DNA of 45,012 bases, taken from Octopus bimaculoides. Taxonomy: Eukaryota. Both the position numbers and the translations under genes were made by a program. Shown piece after piece: positions 3,908 through 44,958 of the stretch; positions within the stretch are counted from its first letter, which is position 1; each line of letters starts with the position of its first letter. Location of the stretch: assembly GCF_001194135.2 (NCBI RefSeq), contig NC_068994.1, positions 17,695,090 through 17,740,101 of the forward strand, given 5' to 3'. The notes under the pieces are model-generated. The model did not search any database. It saw only the letters and a list, made by a program, of their open reading frames with translations, and was not told the DNA's origin.

Positions 3908-4505
3908 CTGTCACCATATTTTAACAATTTTTTTTTTTGATAACGCATGGTGTCTCCAAGCAGACAGTTAGTACAAGAGAGATAATCATTTCCTCATAAT
4001 AACTGGTGGGATTAGAAGTTTAAATCTGAAAGTAAGGAAATGAAGAAGAAACATACAAGAAACATTTCTTTTCTTTTTTGTTTTGTTGCTTACTTATATT
4101 ACAAATTCTTAAAATTTCTCGTCAGTAATAATCATGTATAGCGTTATTTCATTCTTTTTAGAAATCAGTAGTACGACATAATCTGAGAAATATTAATTAA
4201 ACATCTTATGAAGCAAAACATTTCTTACAGACAGAAAATAATTACAATCTGGAAGAAATTCATGGGATGTGCAATTTTCTTATCTTTTTTTCCTTTCTTT
4301 CTTCATTGAGCATTATCACAAGGTCACTTTTTACAGGGGATGATAGAATTAGTTCCAGTATATCACTGGTATTTATTTAATACATCTCAGAAGGTAAAAT
4401 ACAGAGTTGGTTGAGTTAGTCATTCAAGTAGATTATAAACAAAACTACAATATGGGTTTAGCTTGGCATTCTTCCATATCTGTCATTCCACTGCTTAAAG
4501 AATAA

Positions 4506-4629
4506 TTATCCTTTCAGGATCAATAAAATAAGTACCAGTGAAGCACTGGGGTTGATGTAATTGATTAACCCCTCCCTCATAATTGTTGGCCCTGTGTCAA
4601 AATTTGAAATCATTATCATTATTATTATT

Positions 4630-4691
<62 letters not shown>

Positions 4692-5165
4692 CATTGTTCT
4701 TGTTGTTGTCAAGGTGGCAAGCTGGCAGAATTGTTAGCTCATCAGTCAAAATGCATAGTGACATTTCTTCTGGCTTTACATTCTGAGTTCAAACTTCACT
4801 GAGGCCAGCTTTGCCTTTCGTCATTTCAGGCTCAGTAAAATAAAGTACCTTTAGGGGGTCAATAAAATAAGTACTCATCAAATACAGGGGTTGATGTAAT
4901 CAACTAGTTCCTTCCCTAAAAAATTTCAGGCTTTGTGTCTGTAGTAGAAAGAATTATTTGAATCCAGTGTTCAGTTGGTATTTATTTTATCAAACTTGAA
5001 AGGACGAAAGGCAAAGTTGACCTTGTTCAAATTCCACTGAGGTTGACTTTGCCTTTCATTCTTTTGGGGTCAATGAAATAAGTACCAGCCAACTATTGAG
5101 GTCAATGTAATCAACTTATCCCCTCCCACCAAAATTTCAGTCCTTGTGCCTATAGTAAAAAGGAT
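4506..5165 (+). mobile_element. Array of SINE family A copies and fragments separated by (ATT)n tails
   Basis: Recurrent motifs gagctggcagaat, ttctgagttcaaa, gactttgcctttcatcc and aagtaccag, ending in (ATT)n. A short reverse fragment lies near 4940-5020. Confidence 0.8.
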
Positions 5166-5170
5166 TATTA

Positions 5171-5790
5171 AGTGAGAGAGCAGTGCATGCCATCAAAGTG
5201 ACACTGGGGTAAAATATATGAAGCCCAGTACACCCATCATGACTACCCATCTGATAAGGGTACACCAGACACATGCATATGTGTGCAACATGGTGATCTC
5301 ATATCAAGATAAACAGCACATGATTTTGCAGGTGGAACCCAGTTAGAATTTTCTTCAGGTCAAGTAGCCCATCCTGCTCAAAAGGTCCCTGAATAAGGGT
5401 TAAGGATGTTGAACGAAACACCCATGATTCCAGAGGTGAATTATCCAAATCCCAAAGAATTCCTCTCGACACCATGGCTATGATGCTCCCCCACTACTTN
5501 NNNNNNNNNGGTGAATTATCCAAATCCCAAAGAATTCCTCTCGACACCATGGCTATGATGCTCCCCCACTACTTCTGCTCGTAATTAGAGATGCACATAT
5601 TGTCAGCCACTAAGGGACATGCTCAACTGGTTAAGGTCAAACTGACAAGCGAATCTGTGGTATTGAGCAGAATATTTGCTGTCACCCATCTTTTATACCG
5701 AGACAAAACAATGTACATGATAACACTTCCAATCAGTTAAGATGAGAAGCCATGAGAGCCACTGCCTGGTACTGCATCAGGGCATGATGC
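5171..5790 (-). mobile_element. Unclassified ~600-bp interspersed element with 10-bp target-site duplication
   Basis: AGGATTATTA flanks both ends (5161-5170 and 5791-5800). Higher GC than the flanks, no TIRs seen. Contains a 10-N gap. Confidence 0.6.
5500..5509. other. Assembly gap (10 N) with duplicated flanks
   Basis: About 55 bp before the gap recur immediately after it. Confidence 0.95.
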
Positions 5791-5873
5791 AGGATTATTA
5801 TTATGATCATTATTATTACTATTATGGTTATTTTTATTATCATTATTATTATTATTATTGTCATTATTATTAT

Positions 5874-6066
5874 AAAAGATGGTGAGCTGACAGAATTGCT
5901 AGCATGCTGGATGAAACGCTTAGCAGTAGTTTGCTTGTCTTTACATTCTGAATTCAAATTCCACCAGGGTTGGCTTTGGCTTTCATCCTTTTGGGGTCAA
6001 TAACAGAAATACCAGTTGACTTATCCCCATACCCGAAATTGCTGGCTCTGTGTCAAAATTTGAAAT
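5874..6066 (+). mobile_element. SINE family A
   Basis: gatggtgagctgacagaattgctagc...ttctgaattcaaattcc...ctttcatcc, following an (ATT)n tract. Confidence 0.8.
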
Positions 6067-6666
6067 TATTATAAAAATGCAACTTTGTTATTACTTTCTG
6101 CTTCTAGCATTAATGGGCAAATATCTTCCACCATAGCCCTGGACTTATGAATTTGGTAGACAGAAACAGTGTGTACACTCATGTGCATGTGTGCACATCT
6201 GTTTTCCATCACTTGACAACTGCTATTGGTTTGTTTATGTCTCCAAAACTTAAAAGTTTAGCTAAAAGAAACCAACCAATAGAATAAGTACCAGATTTTA
6301 AAATAAATACTGATGATGATAATATAAACAGCTAAACCCTTCAAAGTGCTGCCCCTAGCATGATTGCTGTTCAATGACTGAAACAAGAGTAGTAATCCTG
6401 TTATTAAAGTGTCACATATATCTTAGTTCTTTAGGTTAATACTTAACTTAACATTACAAGGAAAATGCTTTCAAAGTTCATCATGTGTCACCTAAAAACC
6501 TTTGGCATGTCACCAGATGCAGGTGTCATACCTTTGCTATCACTGGTCTATAAGAATAAATGATTGAATAAATGATTACTTTGTCATCAATGTCATACCA
6601 TCTTTACTTCAAATTTTATGGTCAAATGCAGATAGTTTTCATTGTTATTATTATTAGTAGAGAGGA

Positions 6667-6717
<51 letters not shown>

Positions 6718-6722
<5 letters not shown>

Positions 6723-7090
6723 GCTCTGCCAAGGAAGGAGGTTATGTTTTCATTGGTGTTGGTTTGTCCGTCTGTGTGCAACATAACTCAAAAAGTTGTG
6801 AACGGTATTTGATGAAACTTGCAGGAAAAGTTGGTAATGACACAAGGAAGAGATGGTGAAATTTTGGTAGTGATCAGGGAAGTTTTATGGATTCTTGAAG
6901 GATTTTTCATTTGTTATATTTACTTTACATGAAGTATTACAATGTTATGTTCTTTGATTATCTCCCTTGAAAACACGTTCCTCGTTTCCACATAACCTAA
7001 GATGGCGTTGCTGTTTCCAAAGTTTATTTTTGTTTCTCTATTAGTAATTTTACTCGCATACCTATCTTAAAATGAGCTGCTTGGCGGAGG
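6718..7090 (+). mobile_element. Helentron/DINE-1-like non-autonomous element (tentative)
   Basis: Starts ctctgccaagg...ggaggttatgttttc and has an internal gtctgt microsatellite-like stretch. A complementary sub-terminal motif cttggcggagg lies at 7080-7090. Classification is inferred from resemblance to Helentron-associated interspersed elements. Confidence 0.45.
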
Positions 7091-7094
7091 ATGA

Positions 7095-7480
7095 CATGAC
7101 AAGCCTTGACTATTGGGATCGACTCAAAAAGCTCAGGCTTTGCTCCCTCCACCACCGCTGTGATTTCTATATCATCTGTATGATGTGGAAAATATTCCAT
7201 CAACATTGCCCATCTTTAAAATTTGTTCGAGGCTTGGCCCCTGTGCCATCTGTCCACTACAGAAATGCTCATGTCATATCACAACACTATGACAGAACTA
7301 TTTCACTTCAATTGGCCCTGCTCTCTTCAACATCATGCCAGACATACATAAAGGAAGAAAGTGACTTCACGGCATTCAAATGATCCCTAGATGATTACCC
7401 CCAACAAATACCAGATAAACCAACCACACCCAGATATGCCTCTGAAAACAATAACCCCCTGCTTGAATGGGCTATGGTTC
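7095..7480 (+). mobile_element. CR1/L2-like LINE ORF2 3' fragment, degenerate
   Basis: LDYWDRLKKLRLCSLHHRCDFYIICMMWKIF and FK*SLDDYPQQIPDKPTTPRYASENNNPLLEWA resemble CR1-group ORF2 C-termini (L.Y.ERL..L.L.SL..RR.R). Confidence 0.72.
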
Positions 7481-8020
7481 CCCAGAGCTGACTGTGTATC
7501 TCTTCCAGGTGGTGCTATTAAATTAGACATGGCCTGAGTCAACTTCGGCTGAAACTTATCAAAGTAATCTAATCTATGCTGTAACCTTTTAAGCAAAGCA
7601 TGACAATGTGAGTAGAGGCTGATATCTTAACATTTCAGATGGTCTTAAGTATTAAAAAAATTATCAAAGATTTATATAGAACTACATTCAGAGTATGTCT
7701 ATAAGCTATTGTGTTTAAACCTGGTTTCTATCCTCAAACTGTTCTGTTTTGTAGTTGCAATTTAAAAAAAAATTTTTAATAAAGCACTGTGAAATTAGAA
7801 AAATCAAAAATCTGCAACAATCTCGGTCCCATGAGTATCTGATAATGGATTTTCAACTGTGTAAAGAAACTGATTGTGGTGATCGTAGTTTTGACAGTGA
7901 TTGTGGTGAAAGCAGAGACAGTGTTGATGATGACCAGGGTCGAGATAAGTATGGGAGGTTATATTTTTGCTGGTGTTGGTTTGGGAAATTGGGTGATTTT
8001 CAGCCTGCATGTATATGGGT

Positions 8021-8068
8021 GGAAATGAGCTGCTTGGTGGAGGTCTGCGTTCTCTGAGCGCTTTTCTA

Positions 8069-8070
<2 letters not shown>
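8021..8070 (+). mobile_element. 3' terminus of the Helentron/Helitron-like element (ends CTAGT)
   Basis: aaatgagctgcttggtggaggtctgcgttctctgagcgcttttctagt. Its first 21 bp match 7070-7090. Confidence 0.45.
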
Positions 8071-8100
<30 letters not shown>

Positions 8101-8119
8101 CATCATCATTATTATTATC

Positions 8120-8850
<731 letters not shown>

Positions 8851-26085: not shown

Positions 26086-26460
26086 NNNNNNNNNNNNNNN
26101 NNNNNNNNNNNNNNNNNNNNNNNNNNNNNNNNNNNNNNNNNNNNNNNNNNNNNNNNNNNNNNNNNNNNNNNNNNNNNNNNNNNNNNNNNNNNNNNNNNNN
26201 NNNNNNNNNNNNNNNNNNNNNNNNNNNNNNNNNNNNNNNNNNNNNNNNNNNNNNNNNNNNNNNNNNNNNNNNNNNNNNNNNNNNNNNNNNNNNNNNNNNN
26301 NNNNNNNNNNNNNNNNNNNNNNNNNNNNNNNNNNNNNNNNNNNNNNNNNNNNNNNNNNNNNNNNNNNNNNNNNNNNNNNNNNNNNNNNNNNNNNNNNNNN
26401 NNNNNNNNNNNNNNNNNNNNNNNNNNNNNNNNNNNNNNNNNNNNNNNNNNNNNNNNNNNN
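26086..26460. other. Assembly gap
   Basis: N run. Confidence 0.99.
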
Positions 26461-26479
26461 TATATATATATATATATAT

Positions 26480-27900: not shown

Positions 27901-29580
27901 AACATGTGAATGTGTGCTTGTGTGTGAGCCTGTATGTCTGTATGAATGTTGTTCCATGTATCCTTGTTAAACATCAAGTGAAATAACAAAAAATAAATCT
28001 TTTTTAAAAAGCCAGTAACTTTGCCTACATTCTTCAGTAAATAAAAATTCCTATTTCAGCTTTCAATGTGAAATGACCATACTTGAAAAACAGGTAAGGG
28101 CCTCTAGGTGTAAAAAACCTACTTCAACAAGTTTTATTTAACCCACACCAGCATGCAAAAGCTCTCTGGATCATATGTGGCAGATGTATCAACACCACCA
28201 TTTTAATATATGCTTTTCCATGTTTGCATGAGTCAAACGAAGTTTATTGAGGTAGATTTTCTATGGCTAGTTGTCCTTCCTGTTGCCAATGTTCATCTGT
28301 TTCCAAGCTAGGCAATAATATGTTACAACCAAGTTACAACTATACAGTGATGCCAAGACAAGGAGTCACAAACACACACATGCGCATATATGGATGACAG
28401 GCTTCTTTCAGTTTCCATCTACCAAATCCATTCACACGTTTGCTTATTTTTAGGAAACTCAACTTAAACCATTTTCTGAATGGTTTAGATGCAACAATTT
28501 TGAGTGAATCAACATTTGCAGACCAACTGAAGATCATCAGAATCTTTCAGCAATTTCTTCAAAATATAATAGATTCTTGGAATTGTCATTATTTTATGTA
28601 TATTAATAAACCGTGGCAAGACCAGTAATGATGTAATCCACCACATGTAGCCTCTAGGGATTTTTGTATAAAACTATAATATAATTTAATTGTTTAAGAT
28701 ATTTATCGTAGTTTGGTTTATTAAAAAAAAAAGAGCATGATACCAAGGGAGATAATTCATTCAAGCTTAAAAAAAATTTTTTTAACAAAACTTTGCAATT
28801 TCCAAAGAAATATTACTACCTTTGAATTTCTTTAAGAAAGCAAATCAGAGACAATAGAGTACTCATGTAGATTTTGAATAAGATAAAATTGTCAAATCAT
28901 AATAAATGAAAGTGAATAAAAAAACCTTCACTTTTTTGTGTCTATCCAAAACATTTTCATAAATTTGTTCTAAACATCCACATTTGTTTTCAGACTTATT
29001 TAGCTCTTGCTTCATATATTCTGAGCAATATAAAGCTTTCCTTTCATAAGTTCCAAGTTACTCTGGGGTTGAAAAAATAATTGGTAATATATAAAATATA
29101 TGAATATGATACTTGGACACTAGGCACAAGTATGTCTTGGGTATCACATATGATACACAGGATGGGTAAAGGGTTAATTGATAAAATTGACCAATTTCCA
29201 CAGCACAAAGACTAATTATCATTCAATAGATACAGGCATGGCTGGCTGTATGGTCAGAAGTTTGCTTTCAAACCACACAGTCTCTAGTTCGATCCTATTG
29301 TATGACACTTTGGGTAAGTATTTTCCATTATAGCCCTGGGTCAACCAAAACCTTGTCAGTAGTTATGGTAGATGGAAACTGAAAGCAGCTCACTATATAC
29401 AGATATATGTATGTGCATGCATATGTTAGTATTTCATTATGTGATATCATTGTAATGCGTCTGGTCATGGACAACATCATCTTGCTTGGAAACAGGTGAG
29501 GGTTGGCAACAGAAAGGGCATCCAGTTGTAGAAAACCTGACTCTATAACTTCCTTCTGACCCAAGTAAGCACAGAAAAAT

Positions 29581-29976
29581 GTGCATTGATTCCCAGCGAC
29601 ATGGTTCCAAGTTCAGTACAACTGCATGGCAGCTTGGGCATGTGTCTTCTTATAGCCTGTAACCTTGGGCCAAATAAAGCCTTGCGAGTGGATTTTATAG
29701 ATAGAAACTGAAAGAAGCCTGTCATATATATTTATATATATACACACACATCTATGTGTGGGTGTCTTTGTGTCTGTGTTTGTCCCCTAACACCACTTGA
29801 CAACCAGTGTTGGGGTGTTTATGTCTCCATAACTTAGTGGTTTGGCAAAGAGGTCAATAGAATAAGTACCAGGCTTTAAAAAAAAAAGGACTGGGGTTGA
29901 TTCATTTGACTAAACATTCAAGGTGGTGCCTCAGTATTGCTGCATTCTAGTGACTAAAACAAGTAAAAGATTAAAA
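29581..29976 (+). mobile_element. SINE family B, near full length
   Basis: Head, TA/TG spacer and tail ending gactaaaacaagtaaaagattaaaag. Confidence 0.8.
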
Positions 29977-39575: not shown

Positions 39576-39610
<35 letters not shown>

Positions 39611-39994
39611 NNNNNNNNNNNNNNNNNNNNNNNNNNNNNNNNNNNNNNNNNNNNNNNNNNNNNNNNNNNNNNNNNNNNNNNNNNNNNNNNNNNNNNNNNN
39701 NNNNNNNNNNNNNNNNNNNNNNNNNNNNNNNNNNNNNNNNNNNNNNNNNNNNNNNNNNNNNNNNNNNNNNNNNNNNNNNNNNNNNNNNNNNNNNNNNNNN
39801 NNNNNNNNNNNNNNNNNNNNNNNNNNNNNNNNNNNNNNNNNNNNNNNNNNNNNNNNNNNNNNNNNNNNNNNNNNNNNNNNNNNNNNNNNNNNNNNNNNNN
39901 NNNNNNNNNNNNNNNNNNNNNNNNNNNNNNNNNNNNNNNNNNNNNNNNNNNNNNNNNNNNNNNNNNNNNNNNNNNNNNNNNNNNNNNNNNNNNN
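39611..39994. other. Assembly gap
   Basis: N run. Confidence 0.99.
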
Positions 39995-40754: not shown

Positions 40755-43436
40755 TTAGACAGGTTGCTTCCGATCATCAACATCAAAATCTAATACCATT
40801 AATTTTGTTTCTTCTGTACCATTCCGACTGCCAACAGCACATATAAGTTTGGTGTTGGTGCAGCGTACCCGCCATACAACTCCACCACTTCCACCACTTT
40901 CTAGTGTCACTAAATTCCGTAGAAACTCACCAGTCTTTAAGTCCCAGATTTTTACAGTTCCATCATCTGATGAAGTTATCACAAATTTCTTGTTAAACTG
41001 CAAGCATGTGACAGCACTCTGGTGTCTGTTCGGACCCTGCAGTGTCTGAAGGCAACGACCAGTGCGAATGTCCCAAACTTTAACAGTGGAATCAGCATTG
41101 CCCGAAACAAGTATATTCTCTTTCAGTTCCATACCACTAGTCAGCGACTGGTGACCAATGAGCGTATGTAGGCAGGTGCCTGTCTCAACATCCCAGACAC
41201 GGATTGACGTATCCAAAGAGCCACTAACTATGTGTGTACCATCAAACTGTAGTGAGTACACCCTGTTAGTGTGTCCTTGCAGAGAGTGGAGACAGGCTTC
41301 AGTCTCTGGATCCCACACTTTAACCGTGTAGTCATAGGCTCCACTGACCACCCGTCGCCCATCATATTGAACACAACGAACTGCTGCAACATGCCCCATC
41401 AAAACATGCAGGCACTGACCAGTATCAATGTCCCAAACTCGAAGTGTAGCATCTCTCGAACCACTCACAACTTTATTCCCATGCAAGTGCATACAACGCA
41501 CTGTTGATGTGTGACCATATAAAGTATGAATGCACTGGCCAGTTTCTGCATTCCAAACTTTGAGTGTTCGGTCTGTAGATCCACTAATAATGATATTGTC
41601 AGCCATCTGTGATGCCCACACACCACCAGTATGACCAATAAGTGTTCGTAAACATTTCCCAGTCAATGATGACCAAACTTTTAGTGTGTTATCATCAGAC
41701 CCACTCACAATTCTGCTACCACAAAATTCTAAACAGGTTATCACATGATCCTCATGACCTTTGAGGAGTTTTGGTGGACGAATTTTACCACATCTCCAAT
41801 ACTGTTCGATCTGATGTTGTCGCATGTAAAGAGTTTTCCAGGGACTTCTCAACATACCTTGAGATCGTCGTCTTACACTATATCCAAATACTAAAGATTC
41901 ATCAATTCCTTCTTCGTTACATTTTTCCCGCCAAAGTAAATTATCCTCGGTAAGAACACGCCAGTAACGACAAGTCTGCGCTGCACGGAGAAGATCCTTT
42001 GGTCCAAGATAGGATAGAACATACAATGCCAATTCCTTTGGAAGCAATGAAATGAAATCCCTTTGGAACTGAGGCTCAATAACCTGCATGATATGTCTGA
42101 CCTGGGTGGGTTCACAAAGTTCTATCATCTCATCTAAAGCTAAGCATCGCTCAGGGTTACTCCAGGACTGGAATGTCTGTAACCATTGAGCAAGTTCTGG
42201 AGGGGGGTTGCTTTTTGATGGAATTTTTTTTCTAGTAAAACCCATATTTAAAGTTGACAGGTTATGAGAGCGCAAAGTATCAGAATTAAAGAGTTCTGCT
42301 GAAGAACGACAGAATTTTTTTCCTGGTGTTGTTTCTTCCTCTTCTTGCCAACCAATGTCTTGCTTTCTTTTCATTATATATTTATCCTTGTGTTGATGAA
42401 TAGGCACTGGAATACGAGATTTCAGTGGATGGCTAGAAAATAAACTTTGGTGTGGACTAATAGAGGAGACCAATGACGACCCTAGTCCAGAATTACCATC
42501 GCTGCAACTGTTCTCTAAACTTCCTCCTGTGCCATTCCGATCATTGCTCTGACCATCATTAGTTTCACATTCCCCACCTTCTCCTTTGCCCAACTCGTTA
42601 GCTGATGCAGTACAGGCTTCGGATTTATCAGGGGGGTTATTGTTAGTCCAATTATCCGAATCGGCTTGAATAATATCATTAGTTGTTACCTTCTGGGATA
42701 CTTGGACAGTCATTATATCTTCAGCAGCAGGAGGATTTTGAGAAGCGTCTTCATTGACCACCAAAATCTGCCGGTCTTGGTCAGAGGTAGAACTGGTCGC
42801 AGTACTGGTTACACTACTAGCACCTTCAGAACATTCCAAATTACACAGATTCTCACTTGAACGATTTACACGAAGGCCACTTGAGGTGGAGGAGGACCTA
42901 TTCTTGCTTGTAGAAGGGTCCCATTTAAAATTGATGGCGTATGATGTTGGAATAGTAGTTGTCGCCGGTGGAGAGGTAGTAGTAATAGTACAAGTAGATG
43001 ATAGTGACGATGTAGATGGAGAACTAAAACAAGTATTATTCGAAGAACTTGTATTAAGTACAGATGCACAAGTAAAAGACGAAGTAGTGAAAAGAGAAGA
43101 AGAGGAAGTCTCTATACACTGATGTTCTTCTTTAGCATCACTTACTTCGTTACTGTTGTTCACCGTAGATTGTCTGGGTCGCCGTGGAGACTTCACACCG
43201 TAAGGTACACAACCTAGACTGGATTTGTTCGATTCAAGCCATTCAGTAGTGATGCCGTTAACTTTACACAAATCATCGACACAAGTGAATCCTCCTAAAC
43301 GCTTCCGAGCCTCCACTATACTCTCTGCTCTTCTCGGACCGATCCTATCAAGCGAAGTTAACTCCTCCACGCATGCCAGATTAACATCTATTTTCTTCTC
43401 AGTTGCCCCAGTGGTGTTTTTCTTTCTTCCTACCAT
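40755..43436 (-). CDS. FBXW7: F-box/WD repeat-containing protein 7 homolog (SCF substrate receptor), single-exon, with an N-terminal ComEA-like helix-hairpin-helix domain
   Basis: Uninterrupted 893-aa ORF with an in-frame stop 27 nt upstream of an ATG in strong context (aggaatATGG). From M355 it aligns by eye to human FBXW7: MKRK, CEPTQVRHIMQVIEPQFQRDFISLLPKELALYVLS, LKGHEDHVITCL, YGHTSTVRCMHL, VVWR...CAVGSRNGTEETKL.VLDFDVD. R647/R661/R687 correspond to human R465/R479/R505. Confidence 0.97.
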   Translation of the reverse strand: MVGRKKNTTGATEKKIDVNLACVEELTSLDRIGPRRAESIVEARKRLGGFTCVDDLCKVNGITTEWLESNKSSLGCVPYGVKSPRRPRQSTVNNSNEVSDAKEEHQCIETSSSSLFTTSSFTCASVLNTSSSNNTCFSSPSTSSLSSTCTITTTSPPATTTIPTSYAINFKWDPSTSKNRSSSTSSGLRVNRSSENLCNLECSEGASSVTSTATSSTSDQDRQILVVNEDASQNPPAAEDIMTVQVSQKVTTNDIIQADSDNWTNNNPPDKSEACTASANELGKGEGGECETNDGQSNDRNGTGGSLENSCSDGNSGLGSSLVSSISPHQSLFSSHPLKSRIPVPIHQHKDKYIMKRKQDIGWQEEEETTPGKKFCRSSAELFNSDTLRSHNLSTLNMGFTRKKIPSKSNPPPELAQWLQTFQSWSNPERCLALDEMIELCEPTQVRHIMQVIEPQFQRDFISLLPKELALYVLSYLGPKDLLRAAQTCRYWRVLTEDNLLWREKCNEEGIDESLVFGYSVRRRSQGMLRSPWKTLYMRQHQIEQYWRCGKIRPPKLLKGHEDHVITCLEFCGSRIVSGSDDNTLKVWSSLTGKCLRTLIGHTGGVWASQMADNIIISGSTDRTLKVWNAETGQCIHTLYGHTSTVRCMHLHGNKVVSGSRDATLRVWDIDTGQCLHVLMGHVAAVRCVQYDGRRVVSGAYDYTVKVWDPETEACLHSLQGHTNRVYSLQFDGTHIVSGSLDTSIRVWDVETGTCLHTLIGHQSLTSGMELKENILVSGNADSTVKVWDIRTGRCLQTLQGPNRHQSAVTCLQFNKKFVITSSDDGTVKIWDLKTGEFLRNLVTLESGGSGGVVWRVRCTNTKLICAVGSRNGTEETKLMVLDFDVDDRKQPV
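40790..41765 (-). other. WD40 beta-propeller of FBXW7 (domain within the CDS)
   Basis: Successive GH...SGS.D.T.KVW repeats. Confidence 0.95.
41900..42210 (-). other. D (dimerisation) domain and F-box (domains within the CDS)
   Basis: WLQTFQSWSNPERCLALDEMIELCEPTQVRHIMQVIEP followed by LLPKELALYVLSYLGPKDLLRAAQTCRYW. Confidence 0.92.
43212..43394 (-). other. Tandem helix-hairpin-helix domain (ComEA / HHH_3 type; domain within the CDS, aa ~15-75)
   Basis: KIDVNLACVEELTSLDRIGPRRAESIVEARKRLGGFTCVDDLCKVNGITTEWLE follows the ComEA pattern ININTAS.EEL..LPGIG...A..II.YR...G.F.SV.DL..V.GIG. Confidence 0.85.
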
Positions 43437-44060: not shown

Positions 44061-44756
44061 GATAGTCAATAAAATATTCTCTTTATTTTTGTTTTGTTTA
44101 ATCTTGATTTTCATCTTGCAGAAAAGCATTATTTCTTATGGCAATATACATTAATGAGAATATATATATTGTATATTATATTATATTATGTTATGCTATA
44201 TTATATGTACGCTCATACATTGTTCTTCGAAGTTTCCTTTTTAAAGTTTATTTCAACTCGAAAATGTATCCCTTACTTGAAAGCTGCTACACTGATACTA
44301 ACAAAATGTGTTGAAACTTCATTTTTTACAGAATGAAAACCTAATTCCAACGTATCTGAAACCTTTTTAATTAAATATTTTTTGTTTGAATTTTAGCAAT
44401 TAATTCTTTGGTTCTATTATCCATCTATTCACTCTCCATATCTTAGATTTTAACCATTTTATACAGCATTCATAGAGCACTGGGTAAAATATACATAAGC
44501 GTGTCTGGGGAAAACGGGTTGGTCAAAGCTTTTGTCAAGTTTTAAAAGCTTTTTATATTAGTGTCACAACCAATATCTGATTCCAAATATTGTATTTTAT
44601 TTCTTCCCTATTAAAAGAAATATGGAAAGACTTCCGCCCGTCCCCGCCTCATTTTCTCCCAGATTTGTTCATTTTTGTAATTTTTGGGCCAGAAATCCCC
44701 CTTTTCGGATACGGAGGTTACGGAAAATTGCCAAAAATCGACATTCTTTTATTCTT

Positions 44757-44958
44757 TTATTTGTTTAAGTCATTTGACTGCGGCCATGCTGGAGCACCGC
44801 CTTTAGTCGAGCAAATCGACCCCAGGACTTATTCTTTGTAAGCCTAGTACCTATTCTATCGGTGTCTTTTTGCCGAACCGCTAGCTGACGGGGACGTAAA
44901 CACACCAGCATCGGATGTCAAGCGATGTTGGGGGGACAAACACAGACACACAAACATG

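What the first reader, a model, noticed from the sequence alone, without database searches (positions are those of the whole stretch)
43212..43436. ComEA-type helix-hairpin-helix DNA-binding domain fused to an FBXW7 ubiquitin-ligase receptor
Seen: aa ~15-75 form a tandem HhH (LDRIGPRRAESIV...GGF..VDDL..VNGIT), followed by a basic SPRRPR patch and a ~280-aa S/T-rich linker, all in frame with a complete D-domain/F-box/WD40 core. Established: this HhH type binds DNA without sequence specificity (bacterial ComEA, animal EEPD1 and KIF22). Human, fly, worm and yeast Fbw7/Ago/SEL-10/Cdc4 have no such domain to my knowledge, although human FBXW7 acts on chromatin-bound factors (Myc, Notch ICD, Jun, cyclin E) and at DNA breaks. 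Inference: a DNA-tethered SCF receptor that could scan chromatin or damage sites directly, possibly an undescribed lineage-specific architecture. Caveat: both hairpins deviate from the GhG consensus (RIG and GIT), so DNA binding is unproven. I cannot tell how widespread the fusion is.
Basis: partly seen in the sequence, partly recalled or inferred. Interest (0 to 1): 0.85.

Follow-up and report, generated by a model that had tools for sequence, protein, structure and literature searches.

The report
Octopus FBXW7 with ancestral HhH domain
The octopus version of the cancer-relevant ubiquitin-ligase receptor FBXW7 does carry a ComEA-type DNA-binding-type domain at its front end, but this is an ancient animal feature already auto-annotated in many species (and lost from mammals), not an octopus novelty, and its DNA binding is still untested.

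Summary
Observation confirmed. Window 40755-43436 (minus strand) is one uninterrupted 893-aa ORF. Residues 13-73 hit Pfam HHH_3 (E 1.7e-14). The model superposes on ComEA (0.8 Å). The C-terminal part is FBXW7 (human 2OVP, E 3.9e-268).

The window is Octopus bimaculoides chromosome CM046614.1, and this exact protein is already in NCBI/UniRef.

Interpretation partly supported. The domain type and the in-frame fusion are right; "lineage-specific" is wrong.
- The same architecture occurs in chiton, bivalves, gastropods, annelid, nemertean, brachiopod, hemichordate and amphioxus.
- It also occurs in a vertebrate "FBXW7-like" paralogue (ray, lungfish, amphibians, reptiles, birds).
- That paralogue is sister to canonical FBXW7. 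No mammal or teleost hit carried it.
- An intron splits the HhH domain at the same codon in oyster, amphioxus and turtle, so the fusion arose once and is old.

Octopus genes have lost all coding introns (retrogene-like).

Likely mechanism (inferred): a weak, sequence-independent dsDNA/chromatin tether on a ~330-aa disordered linker, made effective by D-domain dimerisation. The ComEA DNA-contact residues are conserved, but both hairpins deviate from GhG.

I found no paper describing this. Moderate interest; a new variant of a known kind.

The parts
40755..43436 (-). Complete single-exon coding sequence of the Octopus bimaculoides FBXW7 orthologue (893 aa plus stop at 40755-40757).
   Evidence: The ORF is listed. 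The exact protein is found on GCA_001194135.2 CM046614.1 as a 2682-nt gene. It is 74% identical to deer FBXW7-alpha over aa 340-887.
43209..43400 (-). (HhH)2 domain of ComEA/HHH_3 type, aa 13-76, ending at the invariant Cys76.
   Evidence: Pfam HHH_3 hits at E 1.7e-14. A PDB profile search finds EEPD1, ComEA and KIF22. The AF2 model matches ComEA 8dss_B at rmsd 0.8 Å. Invariant residues are D17 N19 A21 L29 G33 A37 R44 F50 C76.
43338..43352 (-). Hairpin 1, L-D-R-I-G (aa 29-33). The first Gly of the GhG motif is replaced by Arg in cephalopods, while the second Gly (G33) is invariant.
   Evidence: Taken from alignment A1. Other taxa have G-I/V-G at this position.
43329..43334 (-). R35-R36, the positional equivalents of the V. 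cholerae ComEA DNA-contact pair K62/K63.
   Evidence: Position 36 is K or R in 19 of 19 sequences. ComEA K62/K63 are required for DNA binding, and R71 is the equivalent of invariant R44 (PMC3879209). The equivalence rests on spacing from the hairpin, not on a ComEA alignment.
43248..43262 (-). Hairpin 2, V-N-G-I-T (aa 59-63). This is G-I-T instead of G-I-G, the same change as in the vertebrate FBXW7-like paralogue.
   Evidence: Taken from alignment A1.
43173..43190 (-). Basic patch S-P-R-R-P-R (aa 83-88) just after the domain.
   Evidence: The 14-23 residues following Cys76 carry net +1 to +9 in 17 of 19 orthologues and +4 in octopus; two vertebrate paralogues are 0 and -1.
42420..43172 (-). 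Ser/Thr/Asn-rich disordered linker, aa 89-339. It contains the short conserved motif D-P-S-T-S-K-N at aa 173-179 (nt 42900-42920).
   Evidence: The linker is 34% S+T. It has pLDDT 30-40 and no predicted secondary structure. It is 34% identical between cephalopod lineages, with dN/dS about 0.3. The PS[TA]S motif occurs in 20 of 59 HhH-FBXW7 linkers against about 3% in shuffled linkers.
42054..42419 (-). Start of the region shared with all FBXW7 proteins, aa 340-461. It holds SRIPVPI, MKRK (M355, NLS-like), PGKKxC and the helical dimerisation (D) domain.
   Evidence: Homology to mammalian FBXW7-alpha begins here. Ancient introns lie immediately before MKRK in oyster, amphioxus and turtle. Helices span aa 415-463.
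41916..42053 (-). F-box, aa 462-507.
   Evidence: Pfam F-box-like hits at E 2.3e-16.
40779..41795 (-). WD40 beta-propeller, aa 548-886. It includes the phosphodegron-binding arginines R647, R661 and R687, which correspond to human R465, R479 and R505 (nt 41376-41498).
   Evidence: Pfam WD40 hits seven times. Human FBXW7 2ovp matches at E 3.9e-268. The residue mapping comes from the alignment, and all three arginines are invariant in A2.

Best explanation
This is the Octopus bimaculoides orthologue of FBXW7, the substrate receptor of an SCF ubiquitin ligase, encoded by an intron-less gene.

Shown here:
- A folded ComEA-type (HhH)2 domain (aa 13-76) and a basic patch sit at the N-terminus.
- They are joined by a ~330-aa disordered tether to the dimerisation domain, F-box and WD40 propeller, which keeps the phosphodegron-binding arginines.
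- The architecture is the ancestral bilaterian state of FBXW7. It is found in Lophotrochozoa, hemichordate, amphioxus and a vertebrate FBXW7-like paralogue.
- The canonical vertebrate FBXW7 clade, including every mammalian and teleost hit, lacks the domain. It joins different N-terminal sequence at the same ancient exon junction, just before MKRK.

Inferred:
- The HhH domain makes weak, sequence-independent contacts with the phosphate backbone of double-stranded DNA. The contacts would come from hairpin backbone amides and R35/R36.
- Two copies are brought together by D-domain dimerisation, and the basic patch helps. Avidity then concentrates the ligase on chromatin.
- The long flexible linker lets the propeller reach phosphorylated DNA-bound substrates such as Myc, Jun, Notch-ICD and cyclin E orthologues.
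For: Domain identity:
- Pfam HHH_3, E 1.7e-14.
- A profile of 19 orthologous N-termini hits EEPD1 9yi2 (two domains), ComEA 8dfk (1.4e-17), ComEA 8dss and KIF22 2edu (1.5e-10).
- The model superposes on ComEA at 0.7-0.8 Å.

Core identity.

One protein:
- The frame is uninterrupted, with chance probability ~5e-11.
- The HhH is 86% conserved against 34% for the linker across deep cephalopod divergence, with saturated dS.
- A spliced, AATAAA-terminated oyster mRNA contig carries HhH, F-box and WD40 together.
- RNA-derived cephalopod contigs carry the whole ORF. In the same contigs the neighbouring SMYD-like gene is spliced.

Antiquity:
- Taxon list; all 19 re-scanned N-termini hit HHH_3.
- The intron inside the domain is shared by oyster, amphioxus and turtle.
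- In an NJ tree the vertebrate FBXW7 and FBXW7-like clades each have 100% bootstrap support. They are sisters, with amphioxus outside.

DNA-binding plausibility:
- The equivalents of ComEA K62/K63 and R71 are conserved: K/R36 in 19 of 19, and R44 invariant.
- ComEA's own HhH segment is as near-neutral as this one, so charge is no objection.
- The KIF22 HhH tail is needed to carry dsDNA, and a dimer is predicted to stabilise binding (PMC13581288).
- Isolated EEPD1 (HhH)2 domains do not bind DNA stably, but four per dimer do (PMC12988330).

Flexible tether: pLDDT 30-40 for aa 82-410.
Against: - No DNA-binding experiment exists for any FBXW7 HhH domain.
- In cephalopods the first Gly of hairpin 1 is Arg, and hairpin 2 is G-I-T.
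- In V. cholerae ComEA, bulky substitutions of a hairpin-1 glycine (G60V/E) abolish function, although that is the second Gly, which is retained here.
- The same fold occurs in proteins that do not bind DNA, such as PsbU and the TEFM N-terminal domain, both among the fold hits.
- A single EEPD1-type (HhH)2 does not bind DNA on its own.
- Caenogastropod FBXW7 and canonical vertebrate FBXW7 do without the domain, so it is dispensable for core function.
- Substrates and dimerisation are assumed from vertebrate and yeast work, not shown for octopus.
Confidence: 0.6

Rival explanations
1. The HhH fold is real and conserved but is not a DNA binder here. It would serve as a protein-protein, RNA or poly(ADP-ribose) interaction module, or as a localisation or stability element, as in other HhH-fold proteins that do not bind DNA.
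For: - PsbU and the TEFM N-terminal domain appear among the fold matches.
- Tex, an RNA-associated protein, is a sequence and fold hit.
- Isolated EEPD1 (HhH)2 fails to bind DNA.
- Both cephalopod hairpins are non-canonical.
Against: - The closest sequence and structure relatives are ComEA and KIF22, both experimentally shown dsDNA binders.
- The ComEA DNA-contact basic pair and the structural Arg are conserved in all 19 orthologues.
- A basic patch follows the domain in nearly all taxa.
Confidence: 0.25
2. In cephalopods specifically the domain is a decaying relic. DNA binding would be lost through G31R and the G-I-T hairpin, while other phyla with canonical G-I-G hairpins keep the function.
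For: Cephalopods are the only sampled group with Arg at the first hairpin-1 glycine. The octopus gene is an intron-less, retrogene-like copy.
Against: - The domain is 86% identical between octopus and distant cephalopod-like orthologues, while the adjacent linker is 34% identical and dS is saturated. This indicates strong purifying selection on the altered domain.
- The model still folds confidently, with pLDDT ~91.
- Vertebrate FBXW7-like also has G-I-T in hairpin 2.
Confidence: 0.1
3. The N-terminal 354 codons are not part of the functional protein. Translation or transcription would start at M355, and the HhH-FBXW7 "fusion" would be an annotation artefact.
For: M355 (MKRK) coincides with the start of the region common to all FBXW7 proteins. 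The Argonauta hians database model is a 492-aa partial protein lacking the N-terminus. Internal start sites cannot be excluded with these tools.
Against: - The frame is open, with chance probability ~5e-11.
- The HhH is under purifying selection.
- The same N-terminus is joined to the core by splicing in oyster mRNA.
- It is also joined in gene models of amphioxus and turtle.
- RNA-derived cephalopod contigs span the whole ORF.
Confidence: 0.04
4. One reading: a lineage-specific, newly invented fusion of a ComEA-like domain to FBXW7.
For: Classical model organisms were said to lack it. The mammalian hits do lack it.
Against: The architecture is present in at least six phyla and in a vertebrate paralogue. 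The intra-domain intron position is shared. The tree places the HhH-bearing forms as the ancestral condition.
Confidence: 0.01

Closest known systems
Human FBXW7 / yeast Cdc4 (SCF substrate receptor; PDB 2OVP/2OVQ/2OVR, 7T1Y, 1NEX)
   Same: It is 74% identical to mammalian FBXW7-alpha from aa 340 to the C-terminus. It shares the D domain, F-box, propeller and the three phosphodegron-binding arginines.
   Different: Mammalian FBXW7 has unrelated isoform-specific N-termini and no HhH. The octopus gene has no coding introns.
Vertebrate "F-box/WD repeat-containing protein 7-like" paralogue (e.g. Chrysemys P0044, Pristis P0085, Protopterus P0050, Lissotriton P0057, Manacus P0034)
   Same: It has the same HHH_3, linker, MKRK, D-domain, F-box and WD40 architecture. 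It has the same intra-domain intron position and the same G-I-T second hairpin.
   Different: It is a separate vertebrate gene, sister to canonical FBXW7. Its linker is shorter and acidic, and its first hairpin is canonical G-I-G. It has introns.
Bacterial ComEA DNA-binding domain (PDB 8DSS, 8DFK, 2DUY)
   Same: This is the best fold match, at 0.7-0.8 Å and 40% identity, and the best single-domain sequence match. The basic DNA-contact pair and the structural Arg are conserved.
   Different: ComEA is a periplasmic or membrane-anchored DNA-uptake protein with canonical G-I-G hairpins. Here the domain is the N-terminus of a eukaryotic E3 receptor, and its hairpins read R-I-G and G-I-T.
KIF22/Kid C-terminal HhH domain (PDB 2EDU)
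   Same: It is an animal HHH_3 domain used to tether a machine (a kinesin) non-specifically to chromosome arms. dsDNA carriage needs the HhH tail, and a dimer is predicted to stabilise binding. This is the closest functional analogy.
   Different: In KIF22 the domain is C-terminal and attached to a motor. The sequence match is weaker (43.9 bits).
EEPD1 tandem (HhH)2 domains (PDB entry 9YI2)
   Same: It is the best whole-chain profile hit, with two HHH_3 domains scoring 56.7 and 38.2 bits. The domains are flexibly tethered to a dimeric catalytic-fold body, and DNA binding depends on multivalency. EEPD1 hairpins are also non-canonical (G-V-T, G-L-S).
   Different: EEPD1 has four HhH2 domains per dimer, against two expected per FBXW7 dimer. 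Its partner domain is an EEP fold, not an E3 receptor.

Membership tests
FBXW7/Cdc4/SEL-10/Ago family of SCF receptors | F-box that binds SKP1 | tested here: met
   Pfam F-box-like covers aa 462-507 at E 2.3e-16. The region is nearly identical to the human F-box. SKP1 binding itself was not tested.
FBXW7/Cdc4/SEL-10/Ago family of SCF receptors | WD40 propeller with the arginine triad that binds the phosphodegron (human R465, R479, R505) | tested here: met
   R647, R661 and R687 align to the human residues and are invariant in 22 orthologues. Human FBXW7 2ovp matches at E 3.9e-268.
FBXW7/Cdc4/SEL-10/Ago family of SCF receptors | Dimerisation (D) domain upstream of the F-box | tested here: met
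   The sequence from aa ~410-461 is highly similar to the human D-domain region and is predicted helical. Dimerisation itself is not testable here.
FBXW7/Cdc4/SEL-10/Ago family of SCF receptors | Orthology (groups with FBXW7 of other animals rather than with other FBXW proteins) | tested here: met
   All top database hits are FBXW7. The NJ tree places it with molluscan FBXW7 inside a 99%-supported lophotrochozoan clade. FBXW1A/11 score far lower.
ComEA-type (HhH)2 domain, Pfam HHH_3 (PF12836) | Profile match above the curated threshold | tested here: met
   54.1 bits against a cut-off of 27, E 1.7e-14.
ComEA-type (HhH)2 domain, Pfam HHH_3 (PF12836) | Two helix-hairpin-helix units packed as one (HhH)2 fold | tested here: met
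   The model has four helices (aa 23-27, 33-47, 53-58, 64-73), pLDDT ~90, and rmsd 0.7-0.8 Å to ComEA structures. This is a prediction, not a solved structure.
ComEA-type (HhH)2 domain, Pfam HHH_3 (PF12836) | Canonical G-h-G hairpins | tested here: not met
   In octopus hairpin 1 is R-I-G and hairpin 2 is G-I-T. Most other FBXW7 orthologues have G-I/V-G in both. EEPD1, an accepted member, also deviates, so this lowers confidence in function rather than excluding membership.
ComEA-type (HhH)2 domain, Pfam HHH_3 (PF12836) | Basic residues after hairpin 1 that contact DNA phosphates (V. cholerae ComEA K62/K63) | tested here: met
   Octopus has R35/R36. Position 36 is K or R in 19 of 19 sequences. 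Invariant R44 is the equivalent of ComEA R71. The equivalence was judged by spacing from the hairpin, not by an alignment that includes V. cholerae ComEA.
ComEA-type (HhH)2 domain, Pfam HHH_3 (PF12836) | Sequence-independent dsDNA binding | not testable with these tools
   This needs EMSA, anisotropy or chromatin assays.
Processed retrogene | Loss of all parental introns in the coding region | tested here: met
   The ORF is uninterrupted in three Octopus species and in a related genomic contig. Oyster has 13 coding exons, and amphioxus and turtle have multi-exon genes.
Processed retrogene | Poly(A) tract, target-site duplications, and a separate intron-bearing parent gene | tested here: inconclusive
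   No poly(A) remnant follows the stop codon, only TA/CA microsatellite. No second cephalopod FBXW7 appears among the top hits, but cephalopod genomes could not be searched directly.

The most novel reading that the evidence does not exclude
The ancestral bilaterian FBXW7 was a DNA- or chromatin-tethered SCF receptor. Its ComEA-like (HhH)2 domain, working in pairs through D-domain dimerisation, placed the ligase on DNA next to its phosphorylated transcription-factor substrates. The function has been overlooked because, as far as tested here, mammals lack the HhH-bearing gene and zebrafish is reported to have no second fbxw7; fly, worm and yeast are said to lack the domain. Birds, reptiles, amphibians, sharks, amphioxus and molluscs still have it. 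It would therefore be directly testable in chicken or Xenopus cells.
Probability: 0.4. Interest if true: 0.65.

Novelty: new variant of a known kind. Interest (0 to 1): 0.48.

Why it matters
FBXW7 is one of the most studied tumour-suppressor E3 receptors. How it finds chromatin-bound substrates and DNA lesions is explained in mammals by isoform-specific N-termini, nuclear localisation signals and poly(ADP-ribose) binding (this last point is from my own knowledge).

If the ancestral protein carried a real DNA tether, two things follow. First, the mammalian arrangement is a derived replacement. Second, non-mammalian vertebrates would have a second, chromatin-directed FBXW7 whose substrates are unknown.

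The finding also shows how sampling only the usual model organisms can hide an ancient domain architecture. If the domain does not bind DNA, this is simply a conserved accessory domain that databases have already annotated automatically.

Tried and rejected
1. Searching the big protein collection with the 111-aa N-terminus alone found nothing, a limit of the word index.
2. Searching with the N-terminal profile A1 returned only bacterial ComEA-like proteins and none of the FBXW7 proteins. It therefore gave no taxonomic range.
3. The exhaustive representative search with A1 found 75,901 HHH_3-type representatives. Its top 150 were all proteins with 2-19 tandem HhH units whose summed scores outrank single-domain FBXW7. 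It was useless for finding Ecdysozoa or Cnidaria. Whether arthropods, nematodes, cnidarians or fungi have the domain remains untested.
4. dN/dS between O. bimaculoides and O. sinensis/vulgaris was uninformative. dS is ~0.03, with 1-2 changes in the domain. The deeper comparison has saturated dS, so only amino-acid identity and dN are usable.
5. Retrogene hallmarks (poly(A), target-site duplications) were not seen downstream of the stop codon.
6. Most short Logan contigs carrying the cephalopod ORF end in T-runs and are colinear with genomic DNA. By themselves they do not prove RNA origin. Only L009 and L010, with a spliced neighbouring gene, do.
7. Net charge of the HhH core does not discriminate, because ComEA's own segment is near neutral.
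8. Run-accession searches in the literature did not identify the species of P0001-P0003. Calling them cephalopods is an inference from shared derived residues and the tree.
9. Rfam found nothing in the window.
10. The long "inverted repeats" I1-I5 coincide with the run of N at 39606-39993 seen, so I treat them as N-gap artefacts rather than real repeats.


Full report
WHAT IS THERE

The finding's coordinates (43212-43436) are the first 75 codons of one uninterrupted 893-codon reading frame on the minus strand, 40755..43436. An in-frame stop lies nine codons upstream of the first ATG. It is the only substantial ORF in the 45-kb window. The rest is AT-rich, full of microsatellites, SINE-like repeats and runs of N, with no Rfam match.

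An exact-sequence look-up places the protein on Octopus bimaculoides assembly GCA_001194135.2, chromosome CM046614.1. There it is modelled as a single-exon gene, and it is already held by NCBI, UniRef and eukprot.

CHECK OF THE OBSERVATION

- Residues 13-73 match Pfam HHH_3 (PF12836) at E 1.7e-14, 54 bits against a cut-off of 27.
- A profile of 19 orthologous N-termini hits EEPD1 (both of its HhH2 domains), two ComEA structures, KIF22, Tex and TEFM in the PDB.
- The AlphaFold2 model of aa 1-94 is confident over the domain. It superposes on Geobacillus ComEA 8dss at 0.8 Å over 60 columns and on Thermus 2duy at 0.7 Å, with KIF22 second.
- The rest of the protein is FBXW7. It has an F-box at 462-507 and seven WD40 hits. 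It is 74% identical to deer FBXW7-alpha from aa 340 onward. Human FBXW7 structures match at E ~1e-268.
- The three phosphodegron-binding arginines are conserved as R647, R661 and R687.
- In a full-length model the HhH domain (pLDDT ~91) and the D-domain/F-box/propeller are separated by ~330 residues. These have no predicted structure and pLDDT 30-40.

IS IT ONE PROTEIN?

- An open frame of 354 codons ahead of M355 has a chance probability of about 5e-11 at local composition.
- I compared octopus with three more distant orthologues (872/869 aa, unnamed). They are probably other coleoid cephalopods, judging by shared derived residues and the tree. In that comparison the HhH is 86% identical, the linker 34% and the core 97%, with synonymous sites saturated. 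The N-terminal domain is therefore under purifying selection as protein.
- In oyster the same architecture is assembled by splicing. An mRNA contig with an AATAAA signal and the start of a poly(A) tail maps to 14 exons, 13 of them coding. It carries HhH, F-box and WD40 together. The identical protein is encoded on 91 short contigs from other runs.
- In the cephalopod relative, two contigs carry the entire ORF. Head-to-head upstream of it lies a SET+MYND gene. That gene is contiguous in the contigs but split into blocks in a related genomic contig, so these contigs derive from RNA.
- An additional shorter isoform starting near M355 cannot be excluded.

HOW WIDESPREAD?

The full-length search lists PF12836 among the precomputed domains of FBXW7 from these groups:
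- a chiton, seven bivalves, many gastropods and octopuses;
- the annelid Owenia, the nemertean Lineus and the brachiopod Lingula;
- the hemichordate Glandiceps and amphioxus;
- a vertebrate gene annotated "FBXW7-like" in a sawfish, lungfish, newt, caecilian, turtles, lizards, snakes and birds.

I re-scanned 19 N-termini and all hit HHH_3, the best at 5.6e-20. They align with ten invariant positions.

Canonical FBXW7 of mammals, birds, turtles, sharks and teleosts lacks the domain. Pristis and Chrysemys have both genes.

A neighbour-joining tree of the shared region gives 100% bootstrap support to the canonical clade, to the FBXW7-like clade and to their union, with amphioxus outside. This fits a duplication at the base of vertebrates in which one copy kept the HhH. 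No mammalian or teleost HhH copy appeared among the hits. A zebrafish paper also reports finding no second fbxw7 gene (PMC3404928).

The strongest argument for a single old origin is gene structure. The intron that splits the HhH domain lies at the codon equivalent to octopus K45 in oyster, amphioxus and turtle. Another intron lies immediately before MKRK in all three. That second junction is where homology to mammalian FBXW7-alpha begins. From my own knowledge, it is also where the human alpha, beta and gamma first exons join the common exons. The HhH-plus-linker is therefore best seen as the ancestral "first-exon module" of FBXW7.

WHAT IS SPECIAL TO OCTOPUS?

The coding region has no introns in O. 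bimaculoides, O. sinensis or O. vulgaris, nor in a genomic contig of the more distant relative. Oyster has 13 coding exons.

Wholesale intron loss points to an old retroposed copy of the HhH-bearing mRNA that became the working gene. No poly(A) remnant survives. I could not search cephalopod genomes for a parent copy.

Cephalopods also uniquely changed the first glycine of hairpin 1 to arginine.

HOW IT PROBABLY WORKS

Shown: a folded ComEA-type domain, a basic patch, a long disordered tether and a complete FBXW7 core.

Inferred: sequence-independent dsDNA binding.

In favour:
- ComEA and KIF22, the nearest relatives, are proven dsDNA binders.
- In V. cholerae ComEA the pair K62/K63 after hairpin 1 is essential for binding, and R71 for integrity (PMC3879209). 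By spacing from the hairpin, these correspond to positions 35/36 and 44. Octopus has R35/R36, position 36 is K or R in 19 of 19 sequences, and R44 is invariant.
- Avidity matters. The isolated EEPD1 HhH2 region does not bind DNA, while the dimer with four copies does (PMC12988330). For Kid, a dimer of HhH domains is predicted to stabilise DNA binding, and the tail is required for dsDNA transport (PMC13581288).
- FBXW7 dimerises through the D domain (established for human and yeast; conserved sequence here). That would present two HhH2 units on flexible arms.

Against:
- There is no experiment on this domain.
- Both cephalopod hairpins are non-canonical.
- The same fold occurs in non-DNA-binding proteins such as PsbU and the TEFM N-terminal domain.
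- Some lineages have lost the domain.

I put the tether model at about one half. The descriptive claims (a real domain, one protein, an ancestral architecture) I put above 0.9.

COMPARISON WITH WHAT IS KNOWN, AND NOVELTY

- The protein is a member of the FBXW7 family. All defining features that could be tested were met.
- Its N-terminal domain is a member of HHH_3 by profile and predicted fold, but fails the strict GhG criterion in both hairpins.
- Functionally, the nearest analogy is KIF22, where an HHH_3 domain tethers a machine to chromosome arms.
- Full-text searches for FBXW7 or Fbw7 with "helix-hairpin-helix", and for F-box with HHH_3, found no relevant paper.
- A Xenopus F-box survey mentions "Fbxw7-like" genes. 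It did not surface in the FBXW7 + helix-hairpin-helix search, and the Pfam domain list I saw in it names no HhH.
- The 2026 EEPD1 paper does not mention FBXW7, F-box, ComEA or KIF22.

The architecture is thus automatically annotated in many genomes but apparently undiscussed: a new variant of a known kind, not a lineage-specific invention.

VERDICT

- Observation: confirmed.
- Interpretation: partly supported.
- Interest: moderate, 0.48. A real, conserved and experimentally accessible puzzle in a heavily studied protein, but already present in databases and with function unproven.

Noticed in passing
window 40755-43436 (minus); L001 5690-8308; L006/L007 3001-5703; compare L002 3001-9377: The FBXW7 coding region has no introns in three Octopus species and in a related genomic contig. 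Oyster has 13 coding exons, and amphioxus and turtle have large multi-exon genes. This looks like an old retrogene that became the working copy. No poly(A) remnant or parent copy was found.
   Followed up: partly
P0034, P0044, P0050, P0057, P0085 (L016 for turtle); tree: Vertebrates other than mammals and teleosts carry a second FBXW7 gene ("FBXW7-like") with the HhH domain, sister to canonical FBXW7. In many bird annotations it is merged with the neighbouring RRP8 gene (named "ribosomal RNA-processing protein 8 isoform X").
   Followed up: partly
window 42900-42920 (minus; aa 173-179 DPSTSKN); linkers of P0001-P0060: A short motif x-P-S-T/A-S-x recurs in the otherwise unalignable linker of 20 of 59 HhH-bearing FBXW7 proteins, against about 3% in shuffled linkers. 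It occurs in cephalopods, bivalves, chiton, annelid, nemertean, brachiopod and amphioxus, and in only one vertebrate paralogue (P0058, EPSASSE). It may be a phospho-site or docking motif.
   Followed up: partly
P0041 (Tubulanus polymorphus isoform X2), N-terminus: This isoform starts with an unrelated exon and then continues with only the second half of the HhH domain (GGFSSISDILKVPGIGSGVLDQN). An alternative first exon is apparently spliced at the conserved intra-domain intron. That would give a half-domain isoform.
   Followed up: no
P0061 (Babylonia), P0091 (Littorina), P0114 (Batillaria): Caenogastropod FBXW7 models lack the HhH domain and start MA(K/R)RRTEA..., although the gastropod Haliotis has the domain. 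This is either a lineage loss or an unannotated alternative first exon.
   Followed up: no
P0004 (Argonauta hians GAB1603669.1): The database model for this octopod is a 492-aa partial protein covering only the F-box/WD40 part. The HhH end is missing from that annotation.
   Followed up: no
L009 3-1184 (minus) and L001 950-3401: In the cephalopod relative a SET+MYND (SMYD-like) gene lies head-to-head upstream of FBXW7. RNA contigs join the two, suggesting overlapping 5' ends or a bidirectional promoter. No match to it was found in the window or in the 2-3 kb octopus flanks.
   Followed up: partly
L015 49063-49161, 49238-49324, 49401-49487 (Branchiostoma belcheri): The exon encoding QSWSGPERLLALDELIDRCEPTQIKHVMA (D-domain) appears three times in tandem within ~430 bp. 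This is either an assembly artefact or a tandem exon triplication.
   Followed up: no
window 4500-8800, 12400-14600, 29200-29800, 44700-44900; gaps e.g. 39606-39993: There are several families of short interspersed SINE-like repeats, abundant ATT/TA/CA microsatellites and runs of N. The 100% "inverted repeats" 26086-26479 / 39592-39985 reported by the repeat finder coincide with the N run seen at 39606-39993 and appear to be N-gap artefacts.
   Followed up: partly
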